Assembly: GCF_048593235.1 (NCBI RefSeq) | Contig: NC_133618.1 | Span: forward strand, 161,599,162-161,663,161 | Reading direction: 5' to 3' | DNA length: 64,000 nt | Origin: Sminthopsis crassicaudata | Taxonomy: Eukaryota | Shown here: in pieces, positions 1,706 to 59,164 of the stretch | How positions within the stretch are numbered: the first letter of the stretch is position 1 | Layout of the letters: every line of letters starts with the position of its first letter | Notes under the pieces: model-generated | Seen by the model: the letters and a program-made list of their open reading frames with translations, nothing else | What the model was told of the DNA's origin: nothing | The model's database searches: none | Translations under genes and position numbers: made by a program

Positions 1706-2227
1706 TGATTTCTTTTAGATCACACATTTGGTTGTAGCTTCTTGTAATAGAAACAAGGCTCTCAATTTTGGTAGTATTTTTTTTTCACAGTTCCATTGAA
1801 AAAACTTTCTGTTTTAACTTAGGGAAAGGTGGTATGTTACCTATTTTTGAGTTGCAGGAAGTGTGGAGGTATAGAAAATGTGTTTAGATAAATCTACCCT
1901 GTAAATCTAGGTAGTGACATTTTAGGATTTTAGCCTTCCTTGGCTATTAGATGCTGTTGTTGGTATTCTGAATAGTATTTTGAACATCTTTGCTTTAGTA
2001 GTATGTCTTCCAAATGTACCTTAAGGATTTTCTAAGTTTTGGGTCCAAACCTTATTTTTTTATAAAGAGAAATGATGTAGACATTGTTCTGAGTTTGTTT
2101 TCTTTACTTCTTTTTTTAAAATTAGTCTGAAGCTAGCACTAGTGAGAACTTAAGGGGAGGGAGGGTTGGTTTAGAACTTTGTGTCTCATCTCTGAATTAA
2201 GCTTTTTTGTGTGTATGTGTTTGACAG

Positions 2228-2248
2228 GTTAAAGAAAGTCAAGCCGTG
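2228..2248 (+). other. RRBP1: 5' UTR portion of the first coding exon; 1-2227 is upstream intron
   Basis: T-rich tract and ttgacAG at 2221-2227, then 21 nt without ATG before the start codon. Confidence 0.85.
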
Positions 2249-4640
2249 ATGGATATCTATGACCCCCAGACCTTGGGAGTTATGGTGTTTGGTGGATTCA
2301 TGGTCATTTCAGCCATTGGAATCTTCTTGGTATCTACATTCTCCATGAAGGAGACATCCTATGAAGAAGCCCTAGCCAATCAGCGTAAGGAAATGGCAAA
2401 AAATCACCATCAGAAAGTAGAAAAGAAAAAGAAGGAGAAACCTGTGGAGAAGAAGGGACGGGCGAAGAAAAAGGAAGAGAAACCCAATGGGAAAATACCT
2501 GAACCAGAATTGTTTCCCAATGTAACTGTCATCTCCAAAGACTCCATTCCTGAGAGAAGTGTAGTGGTGGCTCCTATTGTGCTAGAACCTGTCAAGTCTT
2601 CAAAATCTCAAGTGGCACTAGCAGCAGTACCACTACCAAAAGCAACAGTAGGGCAACCAACCAAAGGAGTAGCACCCTCACCACCACCATCAACAAAAGG
2701 AGCTGTAGCAGCACAGCCAAACAAAGGAGCAGCAGCAGCACAGCCAGCTAAAGGAGGAGCAGCAGCAGCAGCAGCAGTGCAACCAAACAAAGGAGCAGCA
2801 GCAGCAACAGTGCAACCAAACAAAGGAGCAGCAACAGCACAGTCAACTAAAGGAGGAACAGCAGTAGCAGCACAGCCAGCTAAAGGAGGAACAGCAGCAG
2901 CAGCACAGTCAGCTAAAGGAGGAGCAGCAGCAGCAGCACAGCCAGCTAAAGGAGGAGCAGCAGCAGCAGCACAGTCAGCTAAAGGAGGAGCAGCAGCAGC
3001 ACAGTCAGCTAAAGGAGGAGCAGCAGCAGCACAGTCAGCTAAAGGAGGAGCAGCAGCAGCACAGTCAGCTAAAGGAGGAGCAGCAGCAGCACAGTCAGCT
3101 AAAGGAGGAGCAGCAGCAGCACAGCCAGCTAAAGGAGGAGCTGCAGCAGCACAGTCAGCTAAAGGAGGAGCTGCAGCAGCACAGTCAGCTAAAGGAGGAA
3201 CAGTGCAGCAAACAAAAGGGGCAGCAGCACCACAGCCTAATAAAGAAGCAGCAGTACAACCAACTAAAGGAGGAGCAGCAGCAGCACAATCAGCTAAAGG
3301 AGGAGGAGTAGCAGCACAACCAACTAAAGGAGGGGCAGCAGTAACACAGCCCACTAAAGGAGCAGCAGTGCAGCCAACAAAAGGAGGAGCAGGAGCAGTG
3401 CAACCAAACAAAGGAGCACAACCATCAAAAGGAGCAGCAGCACAACCAACCAAAGGAGCAGCAGCACAACTAACCAAAGCAGTGCCACCACAAACAAAAG
3501 GAGTAGCAGTATCACCAGGAAAACCTGTAGCTGTGGCAGTGGCCCCATCTTCCTCAGTAGAACAAGGGGCAACAGCAGCACCATTAGGGAAGCGAGCAGC
3601 AAAGGCAGCTCGGGCGGCAGCAGCCCAGGCGGCGGCAGCCACCCAGGCAGCTGCAGTTCAGGCAGTACCAGTAGTGCCAGCATCTTCAGTGGGGCAAGGG
3701 GCACCAGCGCCATTGGGGAAGCGGGCAGCAAAGGCAGCTCGGGCAGCAGCAGCAGCAGCAGCAGCAGCAGAGGCAGCAGTGCAGGCAATACCAGTGTCAC
3801 CAGGGGAGCAAGGAGCAGCAGTATCAGCACCATTAGGGAAGCGTGCAGCAAAGGCAGCTCGGGCGGCAGCAGCAGCAGCGGCAGCAGCGGTAGCTGCTGC
3901 AGAGACAGCAGTTCAGGCAGTACCAGTAGTGCCAGCATCACCAGTGGGACAGGGGGCAGGAGTATCAGCACCACTGGGAAAGCGGGCAGCAAAGGCAGCT
4001 CGGGCGGCAGCGGCAGCAGCAGCAGCAGCCCAGGCAGAAGCAGCAGTGCAGCTAGTACCAGCCTCACCAGTAGGGCAAGGGGCAGCAGCACCAGTTGCAT
4101 CTGGAGGACGGGCTGCAGCAAGGGCAGTTCGGGCAGCTGCAGCAGCACAGGCAGCAGCAAAAACAGCTTCTGCCCAGGCAGTACCAGTGGTGCCAACATC
4201 ACCAGTAGGGCAAGGGACCCCACCAGCACCAGCCTCAGGGGCTCGGGCAGCATCGAAAGCAGCTCGAGCAGCAGCAGCTCAGGCAGTGCCAGTAGCATCA
4301 GTAGCAGCTGTGGTAGCAAGTACCCCTGCACCCCCCCTGCAAGGGCAGCCTGCTTCATCCCCTAAGGAAAAGAGGAAGAAGGAAAAGAAGGTGGCAAAGG
4401 TGGAGCCAGCACCCAACCCTGTTGTGAGTTCCATACATGTCCTTTCCTCCAAGTCCTCAGTGCTGGAAGCTGCTCCCAAAGAGGTTCCCGTGGTTGCTGT
4501 TCCTCCTGTTGGCACAAAGACCAGTGCCCCTGCTGCCAACCTAGCCCATGGCAAAAAGGCAGAAGTAATTGGCAACCATGAGGAGCCAAAGAATGAAGCC
4601 CCATCAAAGAAGAAATCTTCCAAGAAAAAGAGTGAGCCAA
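2249..4640 (+). CDS. RRBP1: RRBP1/p180 first coding exon: signal-anchor TM, Lys-rich region, lineage-specific Ala-rich repeat arrays, conserved basic block
   Basis: MDIYDPQTLGVMVFGGFMVISAIGIFLVSTFSMKETSYEEALANQRKEMAK... closely matches the human RRBP1 N-terminus as recalled. Acceptor tttgacAG|g at 2226-2227; ATG 2249 in good Kozak context (gtgATGg); donor ccaa|GTaagc at 4641 (phase 1). The ORF track starts at an upstream GTG and reads through the donor to 4687. Confidence 0.97.
2651..3502 (+). repeat. Coding tandem array A: ~30 units of A(n)Q[S/P][A/T/N]KG(G), with a near-perfect 30-bp core at 2971-3199
   Basis: acagtcagctaaaggaggagcagcagcagc (or a 1-nt variant) recurs at 2971, 3001, 3031, 3061, 3091, 3121, 3151, with a partial unit at 3181; degenerate units on both flanks. 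Confidence 0.97.
3545..4300 (+). repeat. Coding tandem array B: ~6 units of ~40-47 aa, PLGKRAAKAAR-polyAla-QAVPVVPASPVGQG
   Basis: PLGKRAAKAAR starts at 3581, 3710, 3830 and 3971; two degenerate units (SGGRAAARAVR, SGARAASKAAR) follow. Confidence 0.95.
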
Positions 4641-5294
4641 GTAAGCCTCTGATTTCTTTATCAGACTGGATTAATAAATTGTCCTAGTGAGTAGAGGGGA
4701 TGTCTTCTCTTCTAGGTTTTCCATTCCATTCCATTTGGCTTTTATAAAAGCCCCAGTCAAATGATGAGCATTAGTAGTATGTTTTCTTGCTTTTAATGTT
4801 GAAAATACACAATCCCTCAAATGGTGTTTGATTATAGATTCACTTGTTGGGGGTTGGGGAGGTGAAGTACTTTTAAGTTTGTAAAGAGAAAGTTAATGTA
4901 GATTTATTTGATAAGTTTTCTAACTAATAATTTTGTGGGAGGGGAGAGAGTAGTAATAAGACATCTTGTTCTTTTGTTGTATTTTATAGAGAGATATGTC
5001 TATGGTGTTCTTGTTTTAGATACTCTCAAATTGATTCCATAACTACTTTATTTAAAGTATTTTGACAGCCATTTGTTTGAGTTATTTAACTGTGTTTTGT
5101 TTGAAATGAAATTCTTATAAGAAATATGAAATGTTTGGAAAAGCAGCATGTGGTTTAGGGCTTCTTTGTCAGCTAAGTTTACCTGATATTTGTTTCTGCT
5201 TGATTTATGTTCACAGCCTCCTCTTTTGAGGTTTTCAGCATCATAACAGATACCATCATATTTCATTTATATTATTGGATCTATTTGCATTGTG

Positions 5295-19598: not shown

Positions 19599-19907
19599 NN
19601 NNNNNNNNNNNNNNNNNNNNNNNNNNNNNNNNNNNNNNNNNNNNNNNNNNNNNNNNNNNNNNNNNNNNNNNNNNNNNNNNNNNNNNNNNNNNNNNNNNNN
19701 NNNNNNNNNNNNNNNNNNNNNNNNNNNNNNNNNNNNNNNNNNNNNNNNNNNNNNNNNNNNNNNNNNNNNNNNNNNNNNNNNNNNNNNNNNNNNNNNNNNN
19801 NNNNNNNNNNNNNNNNNNNNNNNNNNNNNNNNNNNNNNNNNNNNNNNNNNNNNNNNNNNNNNNNNNNNNNNNNNNNNNNNNNNNNNNNNNNNNNNNNNNN
19901 NNNNNNN
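19599..19907. other. Assembly gap (309 N) after a CT-rich run
   Basis: Ns in sequence. Confidence 0.99.
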
Positions 19908-26629: not shown

Positions 26630-26912
26630 NNNNNNNNNNNNNNNNNNNNNNNNNNNNNNNNNNNNNNNNNNNNNNNNNNNNNNNNNNNNNNNNNNNNNNN
26701 NNNNNNNNNNNNNNNNNNNNNNNNNNNNNNNNNNNNNNNNNNNNNNNNNNNNNNNNNNNNNNNNNNNNNNNNNNNNNNNNNNNNNNNNNNNNNNNNNNNN
26801 NNNNNNNNNNNNNNNNNNNNNNNNNNNNNNNNNNNNNNNNNNNNNNNNNNNNNNNNNNNNNNNNNNNNNNNNNNNNNNNNNNNNNNNNNNNNNNNNNNNN
26901 NNNNNNNNNNNN
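26630..26912. other. Assembly gap (283 N) with the same flanks as the first gap
   Basis: Ns in sequence; flanks ctctctcttc / attgatgcct identical to the 19599-19907 gap. Confidence 0.99.
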
Positions 26913-51369: not shown

Positions 51370-51518
51370 CTCCAGCAGATTCTGATGGCCCCCTCTATCT
51401 ACCCTATAAGACTCTGGTGTCTACTCTTCGAAGTACAGTTTTCAATGAAGGGGAAGCCCATTGTCTCATCGAAATCTTATCAGAGAAGGCTGGGATTGTC
51501 CAGGATACCTGGCATAAG
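51370..51518 (+). CDS. RRBP1: RRBP1 second coding exon (149 nt; TPADSDGPLYLPYKTLVSTLRSTVFNEGEAHCLIEILSEKAGIVQDTWHK)
   Basis: ttaacAG|ct acceptor completes the phase-1 codon from 4640; donor aag|GTaagg at 51519. Matches human GPPDADGPLYLPYKTLVSTVGSMVFNEGEAQRLIEILSEKAGIIQDTWHK as recalled. Confidence 0.97.
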
Positions 51519-59041: not shown

Positions 59042-59164
59042 GCTACTCAAAAGGGCGATCCGGTAGCAGTTTTGAAGCGACAGCTAGAAGAGAAGGAAAA
59101 GCTACTGGCTACCGAACAACAGGATGCTGCTGCTGCCAAAAACAGACTGAGAGAACTTAATAAG
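59042..59164 (+). CDS. RRBP1: RRBP1 third coding exon (123 nt; ATQKGDPVAVLKRQLEEKEKLLATEQQDAAAAKNRLRELNK), start of the coiled coil
   Basis: tttgtAG|gct acceptor, aag|GTaaat donor at 59165, phase 0/0, 41 codons. Matches human ATQKGDPVAILKRQLEEKEKLLATEQEDAAVAKSKLRELNK as recalled. Too short for the ORF track; found by reading. Confidence 0.97.

What the first reader, a model, noticed from the sequence alone, without database searches (positions are those of the whole stretch)
2651..3502. Apparently independent basic decapeptide array in marsupial p180/RRBP1, at a different site from the eutherian one
Seen in sequence: ~30 Lys-containing units whose homogenised core is exactly 10 aa (AAAAQSAKGG, 30 bp, net charge +1). 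The array lies N-terminal to the conserved block SSPKEKRKKEKKVAKVEP...LEAAPKEVPVVAVPPVG. Established (recalled): in human, dog and mouse p180 the tandem decapeptide NQGKKAEGAP (also net +1 per 10 aa), the classical ribosome-binding repeat also implicated in microtubule binding, lies C-terminal to that block. The two units share no real sequence similarity and sit on opposite sides of an anchor, so they are not positional homologues. Arrays A and B together (2651-4348) carry 54 Lys/Arg against 6 Glu, with no Asp and no aromatic residues. Inference: the same exon twice evolved a long basic low-complexity tether with the same period and charge density, suggesting selection on charge spacing rather than sequence.
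Basis: partly seen in the sequence, partly recalled or inferred. Interest (0 to 1): 0.85.

Follow-up and report, generated by a model that had tools for sequence, protein, structure and literature searches.

The report
Marsupial p180 grew its own repeats
In this marsupial the ER protein p180 (RRBP1) carries a long, transcribed, positively charged repeat tract that differs in sequence and position from the well-known repeat of placental mammals. Platypus DNA holds a third kind and birds and turtles have none, so mammals seem to have built this charged tether independently several times.

Summary
Window 2228-4640 (+) is the large first coding exon of RRBP1/p180. Array A (2651-3502) has 30 units, each with one Lys, and a homogenised 30-bp core encoding AAAAQSAKGG. 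Array B (3569-4336) has six units of about 43 aa. Arrays A and B together (2651-4348) hold 54 Lys/Arg, 6 Glu, no Asp and no aromatic residues.

RNA contigs stop exactly at the exon's two splice sites, give zero depth in both introns, and cover both arrays.

Both arrays lie at the same place in koala genomic DNA, although the koala RefSeq model skips them. Array B is colinear unit by unit between the two species.

Chicken and turtle exons have no array. Eutherians keep a 50-aa unexpanded stretch where the marsupial arrays sit, and carry their NQGKKAEG-type array about 95 residues downstream. There, marsupials, platypus and sauropsids have a single unexpanded copy.

Platypus DNA holds a third, in-frame array: about 72 copies of a 27-bp unit encoding KQPQQQQQQ. 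It is also skipped by its gene model and sits at a third insertion point.

Frog, Xenopus and lungfish orthologues have further arrays of their own. Most arrays, including all the long ones, carry about one net positive charge per 8-11 residues; lungfish and array B are sparser.

Independent origin is well supported. Selection on charge is plausible (dN/dS 0.28-0.38) but not proven.

The parts
2228..4640 (+). Large first coding exon of RRBP1/p180 (ATG at 2249). It is spliced to the next exon at 51370.
   Evidence: AG at 2226-2227 and GT at 4641-4642. RNA contigs start at 2225/2228 and end at 4640. Their loose end after 4640 maps to window 51370. RNA depth is 0 in both flanking introns.
2267..2341 (+). 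Transmembrane anchor (QTLGVMVFGG...LVSTF)
   Evidence: Near-identical in all vertebrate orthologues fetched.
2384..2494 (+). Lys-rich region, the known RNA-binding part of p180
   Evidence: Pfam PF05104 covers residues 33-176 at E=2e-25. RNA binding by the human region is reported in PMC3362647.
2651..3502 (+). Array A: 30 units with one Lys each. Net charge +29 over 284 aa.
   Evidence: The terminal units are orthologous to koala's (94-95% DNA identity), while the centre is homogenised within the species.
2891..3199 (+). Homogenised core of array A: ten units AAAA(A)Q[S/P]AKGG, four of them identical 30-mers
   Evidence: Short-read word depth is about 5 times baseline on the core contig.
3503..3568 (+). 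Junction segment between arrays A and B (VAVSPGKP...SSSVEQG)
   Evidence: It is conserved in koala.
3569..4336 (+). Array B: six units of about 38-47 aa. Each has a basic Ala-rich stretch (APLGKRAAKAARAAAA...) followed by a Pro/Val/Gly linker (AVQAVPVVPASPVGQG). Net charge +19.
   Evidence: Six colinear units in koala, 81% aa identity, dN/dS 0.28. AlphaFold single-sequence model predicts six helices at low confidence.
4358..4513 (+). Conserved single-copy 52-aa anchor block (SPKEKRKKEKKVAKVEP ... KEVPVVAVPPVG) that separates the marsupial site from the eutherian site
   Evidence: 52-53 aa in every species compared.
4547..4576 (+). Single unexpanded copy of the segment that eutherians amplified (HGKKAEVIGN)
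   Evidence: Also single in koala, platypus, chicken and turtle. This is therefore the ancestral state, not a reduction.
4607..4639 (+). Conserved Lys cluster at the exon end (KKKSSKKKSEP)
51370..51518 (+). Next coding exon (PADSDGPLYLPYK...), start of the conserved cytosolic body
   Evidence: tblastn with koala RRBP1. The RNA loose end maps here. Sequence.

Best explanation
Window 2228-4640 is the first coding exon of marsupial RRBP1/p180. Between the membrane anchor with its Lys-rich region and a conserved 52-aa block, it has gained about 560 residues of lineage-specific low-complexity sequence.

Array A is a probably disordered Ala/Gly/Gln tract with one Lys every 9-11 residues. Array B is six Ala-rich Arg/Lys modules, probably helical, joined by Pro-rich linkers. 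Both arose in place by tandem duplication of the ancestral linker. Both predate the split between this species and koala. Array A's centre is still being homogenised and resized by unequal exchange.

The arrays are not homologous to the eutherian decapeptide domain. That domain arose separately downstream of the same block, by amplification at a site where marsupials keep one unexpanded copy. Platypus gained a third array at a third point.

Inferred function: like the eutherian repeats, the arrays form a long, flexible, acid-poor polycationic tether on the cytosolic face of rough ER. It would hold polyanions (ribosomes or rRNA, mRNA, possibly glutamylated microtubules) by multivalent charge contacts, working together with the Lys-rich region and the coiled coil. 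What would matter is length and charge density, about +1 per 10 residues, rather than sequence.

Shown here: identity, anatomy, transcription, presence in koala, absence in sauropsids, different insertion points. Inferred: disorder and helices, the in-place seed, and the binding function.
For: - Gene identity.
- Anatomy and composition.
- Transcription: three RNA runs from two closely related organisms cover 2225-4640 in pieces, including arrays A and B. Depth is 0 in the flanking introns, where the DNA run has 46-48. The contigs continue into the exon at 51370.
- Koala: genomic DNA L001:3001-5159 aligns over about 2.1 kb at 73% and encodes both arrays at the same place. Array B is colinear, six units to six. 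First and last A units are 94-95% identical.
- Constraint (window vs koala): dN/dS is 0.38 for the 3' part of A and 0.28 for B, against 0.37 for the N-terminus and 0.18 for the anchor block. Units B1-B4 read RAAKAAR in the window and RAARAAR in koala, so charge is kept. The indel seen in organism B is 15 nt, in frame.
- Independence: chicken and turtle exons are contiguous with no array. The stretch from KPNGKIP to the anchor block is 619 aa in the window, 511 in koala, 683 in platypus, 47 in chicken and turtle, and 50 in eutherians. The stretch after VPPVG is 23-32 aa everywhere except eutherians, where it is 283-411. The flank alignment shows three separate insertion points. BLASTP finds no similarity between arrays.
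- Charge density: net charge per residue is 0.102 (window A), 0.103 (koala A), 0.123 (platypus), 0.093 (Otolemur), 0.094 (Phyllobates) and 0.118 (Xenopus).
- Structure: array A has no predicted secondary structure (pLDDT about 30). Array B gives six helices of 25-31 residues (pLDDT 50-60).
- Function of the eutherian counterpart: reported ribosome binding by the repeats. Repeats plus coiled coil are both needed for ribosome binding (PMC11338522). The basic domains contribute to mRNA anchoring (PMC3362647).
Against: - No binding or rescue data exist for any non-eutherian array.
- Even in eutherians the role of the repeats is disputed. A three-repeat peptide did not bind RNA. The coiled coil, not the repeat domain, drove polysome assembly in one study (PMC3326322).
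- Sauropsids do without any array, and eutherian isoforms without repeats exist, so the tract is not needed for core p180 function.
- Codon usage in array A is almost uniform (GCA 88 of 104 Ala codons, AAA 30 of 30 Lys codons). The invariance of Lys may therefore reflect recent amplification rather than long purifying selection.
- dS in the arrays (0.39-0.42) is twice that of the unique parts (0.15-0.19). This suggests some paralogous misalignment, so the dN/dS values are rough.
- Unit number differs between species (30 vs 19).
- Only two deep marsupial lineages were sampled, and no opossum.
- The AlphaFold model is low confidence.
Confidence: 0.7

Rival explanations
1. Neutral expansion. The arrays are slippage or unequal-crossover products of a (GCA)n/(CAG)n-rich stretch in a permissive disordered linker. 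They are tolerated but have no binding role of their own. At most they act as a spacer whose length matters little. Similar charge densities arise simply because each seed happened to contain one Lys from a Lys-rich neighbourhood.
For: - Many vertebrate lineages have different arrays in this exon.
- Copy number differs between the window and koala, and the core is identical at the DNA level.
- Codon usage is uniform.
- Sauropsids have no array, and eutherian repeat-less isoforms exist.
- RefSeq models of koala and platypus omit the arrays.
Against: - Array B has kept six colinear units since the koala split, at dN/dS 0.28.
- The K/R exchange preserves charge.
- Across about 560 residues there is no Asp, there are no aromatic residues and only 6 Glu.
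- No unit in 49 marsupial A units has lost its Lys; the largest K-K spacing is 13-14.
- All three mammalian lineages reached 400-680 residues with net charge between about +35 and +80, while sauropsid linkers are net negative.
Confidence: 0.25
2. Array turnover from a common mammalian ancestor. The first mammals already had a basic array in the linker before the anchor block. The marsupial and platypus arrays are its remodelled descendants, possibly including a reading-frame change between CAG (Gln) and GCA (Ala). Eutherians lost it after building a replacement downstream.
For: - The marsupial and platypus arrays lie within about 30 residues of each other in the same linker.
- Both are built on CAG/GCA-type trinucleotide runs, and the older marsupial units are 27 bp, like the platypus unit.
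- All three mammalian lineages have long arrays, whereas sauropsids have none.
Against: - The insertion points are separated by a conserved motif (VAVEPVPV in platypus, VVAPIVLEP in marsupials). That motif lies after the platypus array but before the marsupial one.
- No protein similarity was found.
- Unit make-up differs: Lys follows Gln-Pro at a different spacing.
- Eutherians show no relic at that site.
Confidence: 0.12
3. Artefact or non-coding. The arrays are an assembly expansion, or an intron-like segment removed from the mature mRNA, as the ~995-aa koala and platypus gene models imply. In that case the protein would lack them.
For: - The koala and platypus models skip the arrays.
- The koala skip begins at a GT.
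- Eutherians have isoforms that splice out their repeats.
- Contigs cannot show rare isoforms.
Against: - RNA contigs from three runs cover array pieces at depths like the rest of the exon, with no joint skipping them. Intron depth is zero.
- The frame is kept across 1.7 kb, with in-frame variation between organisms.
- The platypus model junction is not canonical by my reading.
- The koala model is explained by a 122-bp tandem duplication that breaks the frame in that assembly.
Confidence: 0.03

Closest known systems
Eutherian p180/RRBP1 decapeptide repeat domain (consensus NQGKKAEGAP, 54 copies in dog and human)
   Same: Same gene and same exon, on the cytosolic side between the membrane anchor and the coiled coil. 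A long tandem array with no aromatic residues and net charge about +1 per 10 residues (0.093 vs 0.102 per residue). The core period is 10 aa.
   Different: It lies on the other side of the conserved 52-aa block, about 95 residues downstream. There is no sequence similarity. The eutherian unit has two Lys and one Glu, while the marsupial unit has one Lys and no acid. Marsupials also have a second module type (array B). The marsupial array has no functional data.
Platypus RRBP1 array (about 72 copies of a 27-bp unit encoding KQPQQQQQQ; L002:2305-4199), found here
   Same: Same exon and same linker before the anchor block. One Lys per about 8 residues, no acidic or aromatic residues, 633 aa, and omitted from the RefSeq model just as in koala.
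   Different: Gln/Pro-based rather than Ala/Gly-based. The insertion point is about 30 residues upstream. No similarity. Transcription was not tested here.
Arrays in amphibian and lungfish RRBP1
   Same: Lineage-specific Lys-containing tandem units in the same exon: Phyllobates terribilis, 12-aa AKGGNKQAPQAD, about 25 copies; Xenopus tropicalis, 7-aa KPAPVSQ, about 12 copies; Protopterus annectens, 15-aa EKPVPSPKD... units, 6 copies. The two amphibian arrays have similar net charge density.
   Different: Shorter (79-288 aa), with different units and insertion points. Protopterus has a lower charge density (one net + per 16 residues). They are known only from gene models.
Repeat-less p180 isoforms (human isoform 2 of 977 aa, short mouse isoforms, chicken ES/130)
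   Same: The ~995-aa koala and platypus models resemble them. They may reflect real internal splicing of the repeat tract.
   Different: In chicken, the absence of repeats is a property of the gene, not of splicing. In this window no skipping joint was seen.
Recurrent repeat evolution in KNL1 (PMC4558858)
   Same: A scaffold protein whose repeat arrays are regenerated independently in many lineages. Known to me here only from the title and abstract listed.
   Different: KNL1 repeats carry a defined phospho-docking motif. The p180 arrays share only charge and composition.

Membership tests
RRBP1/p180 orthologue | N-terminal single transmembrane anchor followed by the Lys-rich region (Pfam PF05104) | tested here: met
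   PF05104 at E=2e-25, 90.9 bits against a cut-off of 25. The N-terminal 134 residues are 88% identical to koala RRBP1 in a global alignment and 92% in BLAST local alignments.
RRBP1/p180 orthologue | Conserved block SPK[DE]K[RK]KKEKKVAKVEP ... KEVPxVxVPPVG and Lys cluster at the exon end | tested here: met
   Present at 4358-4513 and 4607-4639. The block is 52 aa, as in all species compared.
RRBP1/p180 orthologue | Downstream coiled-coil body starting DGPLYLPYK | tested here: met
   Exons at 51370-51518 and about 59042-59164 match koala RRBP1. RNA contigs join 4640 to 51370. The rest of the gene lies outside the window.
Eutherian p180 decapeptide repeat domain | Unit matches consensus NQGKKAEGAP | tested here: not met
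   BLASTP finds no alignment between array A and the Otolemur array. The unit is AAAAQSAKGG or AAVQPTKGG.
Eutherian p180 decapeptide repeat domain | Array located C-terminal to the VPPVG block | tested here: not met
   Arrays A and B lie N-terminal to it. Only 31 aa, with a single HGKKAEVIGN, follow VPPVG.
Eutherian p180 decapeptide repeat domain | Period of 10 residues and net basic charge of about +1 per unit | tested here: met
   The core units are 10-11 aa and the overall density is one net + per 9.8 aa. The edge units are 6-12 aa.
Eutherian p180 decapeptide repeat domain | Binds ribosomes in vitro and in vivo | not testable with these tools
   Known only for the canine and human protein.
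Common-descent array shared by marsupials | Same arrays at the same position in a second, distant marsupial | tested here: met
   Koala L001:3001-5159 holds A and B, colinear with the window. Opossum was not available.

The most novel reading that the evidence does not exclude
The polycationic 'ribosome-binding' repeat domain of p180 is not one conserved domain. It is a trait that monotremes, marsupials and eutherians, and on a smaller scale frogs and lungfish, each built anew at different points of one exon. Most of the arrays, including every long one, converge on about one net positive charge per 8-11 residues with almost no aromatic residues, and the mammalian tracts run to hundreds of residues. 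If so, its function is set by polyelectrolyte properties (length and charge density) and not by sequence. The long version may also be a mammal-wide adaptation of rough ER that arose in parallel after the three lineages split.
Probability: 0.45. Interest if true: 0.85.

Novelty: new variant of a known kind. Interest (0 to 1): 0.68.

Why it matters
The decapeptide repeat is the defining feature of p180. Whether it binds ribosomes, mRNA or microtubules specifically has been argued since the 1990s.

Natural proteins that replace it with unrelated sequences of the same charge density give a ready-made test of sequence against charge. One can swap the marsupial or platypus tract into a eutherian p180 and ask what is rescued.

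It is also a clean case of parallel evolution of a disordered polyelectrolyte domain, with three insertion points in one exon across the three mammalian lineages.

There is a practical warning too. RefSeq models of koala and platypus RRBP1 (about 995 aa) leave out 1.5-1.9 kb of in-frame repeat. Protein databases therefore hide the feature, and comparative studies based on them would wrongly conclude that only eutherians have a repeat domain.

Tried and rejected
- Search for other marsupial or echidna RRBP1 proteins. Three word-index searches and the full HMMER search of representatives returned no protein carrying arrays A or B. The only marsupial entries were the koala model and P0121, a model that skips the whole exon. 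An exact look-up of P0121 found no contig. Opossum and echidna therefore remain untested.
- Chimeric full-length profile. I tried aligning the exon with koala RRBP1. MAFFT aligned the arrays against the coiled coil (A1 and A2), so I did not search with it. A2 was useful only for the window-koala array columns.
- P0167. It scored against array A but is an unrelated FHA-domain protein with TPSRAQSPKG repeats, a composition match only.
- BLASTP between arrays gave nothing. Low-complexity filtering may contribute, so the argument against homology rests mainly on position.
- The AlphaFold model is too low in confidence for a fold search, so none was run.
- Lys invariance as proof of selection. I considered this and rejected it after seeing that all 30 Lys codons are AAA.
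- Exact splice boundaries of the koala and platypus model 'introns'. I could not reconstruct them; one residue at each junction does not match the DNA held.
- Expression of the platypus array could not be tested, because the read tools refuse such loci.
Full report
**What is at the coordinates**

The + strand carries an 813-codon open frame at 2246-4687. Splice signals and RNA evidence trim it to an exon at 2228-4640 with ATG at 2249.

Its product starts with the p180 membrane anchor and Lys-rich region. Pfam PF05104 matches at E=2e-25. The N-terminal 134 residues are 88% identical to koala RRBP1 in a global alignment (92% in BLAST local alignments). Further RRBP1 exons lie at 51370-51518 and about 59042-59164.

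Tandem Repeats Finder reports a 30-bp array over 2654-3416 / 2725-3368 (score up to 707). It also reports a 261-bp, two-unit periodicity over 3569-4216.

Cutting array A after each Lys gives 30 units of 6-12 residues. Ten central units (2891-3199) read AAAA(A)Q[S/P]AKGG, and four of them are identical 30-mers. The edge units are mostly the 9-aa type AAVQPTKGG.

Array B (3569-4336) has six units of 38-47 residues. Each has a basic Ala-rich stretch and a Pro/Val/Gly linker.

**Is it real and expressed?**

Many public runs hold 91-98% of the exon's sampled 31-mers. I laid four of them on 2100-4800.

- The DNA run covers the introns at depth 46-48.
- The three RNA runs (two of organism A, one of a close relative, organism B) have depth 0 at 2100-2190 and 4648-4800, but cover 2225-4640.
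- The RNA contigs start at 2225/2228, with a loose end into an upstream exon. They end at 4640, with a loose end that maps exactly to window 51370.
- Pieces cover arrays A and B: 2225-2745, 2816-2921, 3170-3734 and 3910-4640, plus short core contigs.
- No RNA joint skips the arrays.
- The core contig has about five times the baseline word depth, in line with the assembled copy number.
- Organism B differs by an in-frame 15-nt deletion and one of the two G>A changes listed.

Limits: these are assembled contigs broken at the repeats, so rare isoforms and the exact unit count are not settled.

**Comparison with other species**

The first protein search returned RRBP1 of about 995 aa from koala, platypus, many birds and turtles. 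Longer eutherian forms carried the NQGKKAEG-type array. Taken at face value, that would make the window's arrays unique to its lineage.

The genomic DNA says otherwise.

- **Koala.** The model maps as residues 1-114 at L001:3001-3342 and 116-225 at 4830-5159. The skipped 1.5 kb aligns to the window's arrays at 73% identity and encodes arrays A and B in frame. A 122-bp tandem duplication (3381/3503) breaks the frame in that assembly and probably caused the model to skip the region.
- **Platypus.** The model maps at L002:2001-2306 and 4209-4586. The 1.9 kb between is one open frame with the flanks. It consists of about 72 copies of a 27-bp unit encoding KQPQQQQQQ.
- **Chicken and turtle.** Their exons are contiguous (230 and 226 codons) and have no array.

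**Positions of the arrays**

I used four anchors present in every species and measured the stretches between them.

| Species | KPNGKIP to SPKxK block (aa) | VPPVG to terminal Lys cluster (aa) |
|---|---|---|
| Window | 619 | 31 |
| Koala | 511 | 23 |
| Platypus | 683 | 31 |
| Chicken | 47 | 31 |
| Turtle | 47 | 32 |
| Otolemur | 50 | 411 |
| Naked mole-rat (one isoform) | 50 | 283 |

The block between the two stretches is 52-53 aa everywhere.

With the arrays cut out, the flanks align cleanly and show three different insertion points:

- platypus after KDLEPE;
- marsupials about 30 residues later, after ...AAVPLPKATV;
- eutherians about 95 residues further on, after VPPVG...TGTA.

A short conserved motif (VAVEPVPV in platypus, VVAPIVLEP in marsupials) lies after the platypus array but before the marsupial one.

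BLASTP finds no alignment between array A and either the eutherian or the platypus array.

The single HGKKAEVIGN at 4547-4576 corresponds to a single copy in koala, platypus, chicken and turtle. It is therefore the unexpanded ancestral state, not a reduced eutherian array.

**A wider pattern**

The exhaustive HMMER search, with names, shows further arrays of different units in the same exon of other vertebrates:

- Phyllobates terribilis: 12-aa units, about 25 copies;
- Xenopus tropicalis: 7-aa units, about 12 copies;
- Protopterus annectens: 15-aa units, 6 copies;
- several fish.

Net charge per residue is alike in most arrays: 0.102 (window A), 0.103 (koala A), 0.123 (platypus), 0.093 (Otolemur), 0.094 (Phyllobates) and 0.118 (Xenopus). 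Lungfish (0.063) and array B (0.066-0.074) are lower.

The unexpanded sauropsid linker is net negative.

**History within marsupials**

Array B has six units in both species. They occur in the same order, with the same distinctive fifth and sixth units, at 81% aa identity.

Units B1-B4 carry RAAKAAR in the window and RAARAAR in koala. This is a concerted change that keeps the charge.

In array A, the first and last units are nearest to their koala counterparts (94-95% DNA identity). The central units are nearest to each other (97-100%). Their Ser variant is absent from koala, which instead has a 22-aa double unit. The array is therefore old, but its centre is being homogenised and resized separately in each lineage.

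The flanks and the B linkers share the pattern V-A-x-V-P...G-Q-[G/P]. The first A units resemble the GQPASSPK motif just before the anchor block. From this I infer that both arrays grew by duplication of the local linker. That is my reading of the sequences, not a statistical test.

**Constraint**

Nei-Gojobori estimates for window against koala:

| Segment | dN/dS | dS |
|---|---|---|
| N-terminus | 0.37 | 0.15 |
| 3' part of array A | 0.38 | 0.39 |
| Array B | 0.28 | 0.42 |
| Anchor block to exon end | 0.18 | 0.19 |

The arrays are thus no less constrained than the rest of the exon. The doubled dS, however, suggests some paralogous misalignment.

No unit among 49 marsupial A units has lost its Lys. 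But all 30 Lys codons in the window are AAA, and 85% of Ala codons are GCA. Recent amplification therefore explains much of the uniformity.

**Structure**

A single-sequence AlphaFold model of 2651-4348 is of low confidence (mean pLDDT 39.6). Array A has no secondary structure (pLDDT about 30). Array B forms six helices of 25-31 residues (pLDDT 50-60). I use this only as a hint: A is probably disordered and B probably helical modules.

**Likely function**

In eutherians the repeat domain is the reported ribosome-binding region. Together with the coiled coil it is needed for ribosome binding in neurons (PMC11338522). The basic domains contribute to ribosome-independent mRNA anchoring (PMC3362647).

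Other work gives the main role to the coiled coil (PMC3326322). A three-repeat peptide did not bind RNA.

The best reading for the marsupial arrays is the same job done by different sequence: a long, acid-poor polycationic tether that holds polyanionic partners at the ER surface by many weak contacts. I put this at about even odds against a largely neutral expansion.

The independent origin of the marsupial and eutherian arrays is far more secure, at about 0.85-0.9.

**Novelty**

The library searches found no paper on RRBP1 repeats in marsupials or monotremes. A 2025 review treats the 54 decapeptides as the conserved feature of p180. Protein databases searched here contain no array-bearing marsupial or monotreme RRBP1.

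This is a known protein with a new, non-homologous version of its hallmark domain.

Two first-reader notes on this same window bear on the result. One on the second repeat family (s1-153557) agrees with array B. One on the 'reduced' canonical unit (s1-153556) is corrected above.

Noticed in passing
L002:2305-4199 (platypus genome record CM014208.1): An in-frame array of about 72 copies of a 27-bp unit encoding KQPQQQQQQ (633 aa, 78 Lys, no acidic residues) sits inside the RRBP1 first coding exon. The 997-aa RefSeq model P0002 omits it, and the junction of that model is not a canonical intron by my reading.
   Followed up: partly
L001:3381-3624 (koala): A 122-bp tandem duplication inside array A shifts the frame in this assembly. 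The 993-aa RefSeq model P0001 skips about 3343-4829 and so hides both arrays. It is unclear whether this is an assembly error, an allele, or a real internally spliced isoform.
   Followed up: partly
L003:1501-2190 (chicken) and L004:1501-2178 (turtle): The first coding exon is contiguous and has no repeats. The lack of repeats in chicken ES/130, which older papers treated as a possible splice variant of p180, is therefore a property of the gene itself.
   Followed up: yes
P0172, P0166, P0164/P0263, P0177, P0181, P0183, P0186: Frog, Xenopus, lungfish and several teleost RRBP1 models each carry a different short tandem array in the same exon, Lys-containing in most of them (Oncorhynchus P0181 is an Arg-containing AQEAR repeat). 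The exon behaves as a nursery for repeat arrays across vertebrates.
   Followed up: partly
P0121 (UniParc UPI0007B3FC5A, unnamed marsupial model): This 927-aa model joins a translated 5'UTR exon directly to the DGPLYLPYK exon, skipping the whole first coding exon. Its junction peptide matches the upstream loose end of the RNA contigs.
   Followed up: no
window 4547-4576: Koala lacks 8 residues here (TKTSAPKAEV against TKTSAPAANLAHGKKAEV), so even the unexpanded eutherian-type seed varies in length between marsupials.
   Followed up: no
window 2608-3642 (-) and 3354-4358 (-): Two long reverse-strand open frames (344 and 334 codons) run through the arrays. They are the expected by-product of GCA/CAG-rich repeats that lack stop codons in most frames, not evidence of antisense genes.
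   Followed up: no
window 2674-2703: DNA and RNA contigs from other loci share this 30-base Pro/Ser-coding stretch (loose ends on both sides in runs X1 and X6). The same short sequence therefore occurs in at least one other transcribed place in the genome.
   Followed up: no
window 19599-19907 and 26630-26912: Two runs of N lie inside the 46.7-kb intron between 4640 and 51370.
   Followed up: no
P0167: An unrelated 2628-aa FHA-domain protein with a long TPSRAQSPKG decapeptide array was the only non-RRBP1 protein to score well against array A. It is another basic 10-residue repeat with one Lys per unit.
   Followed up: no
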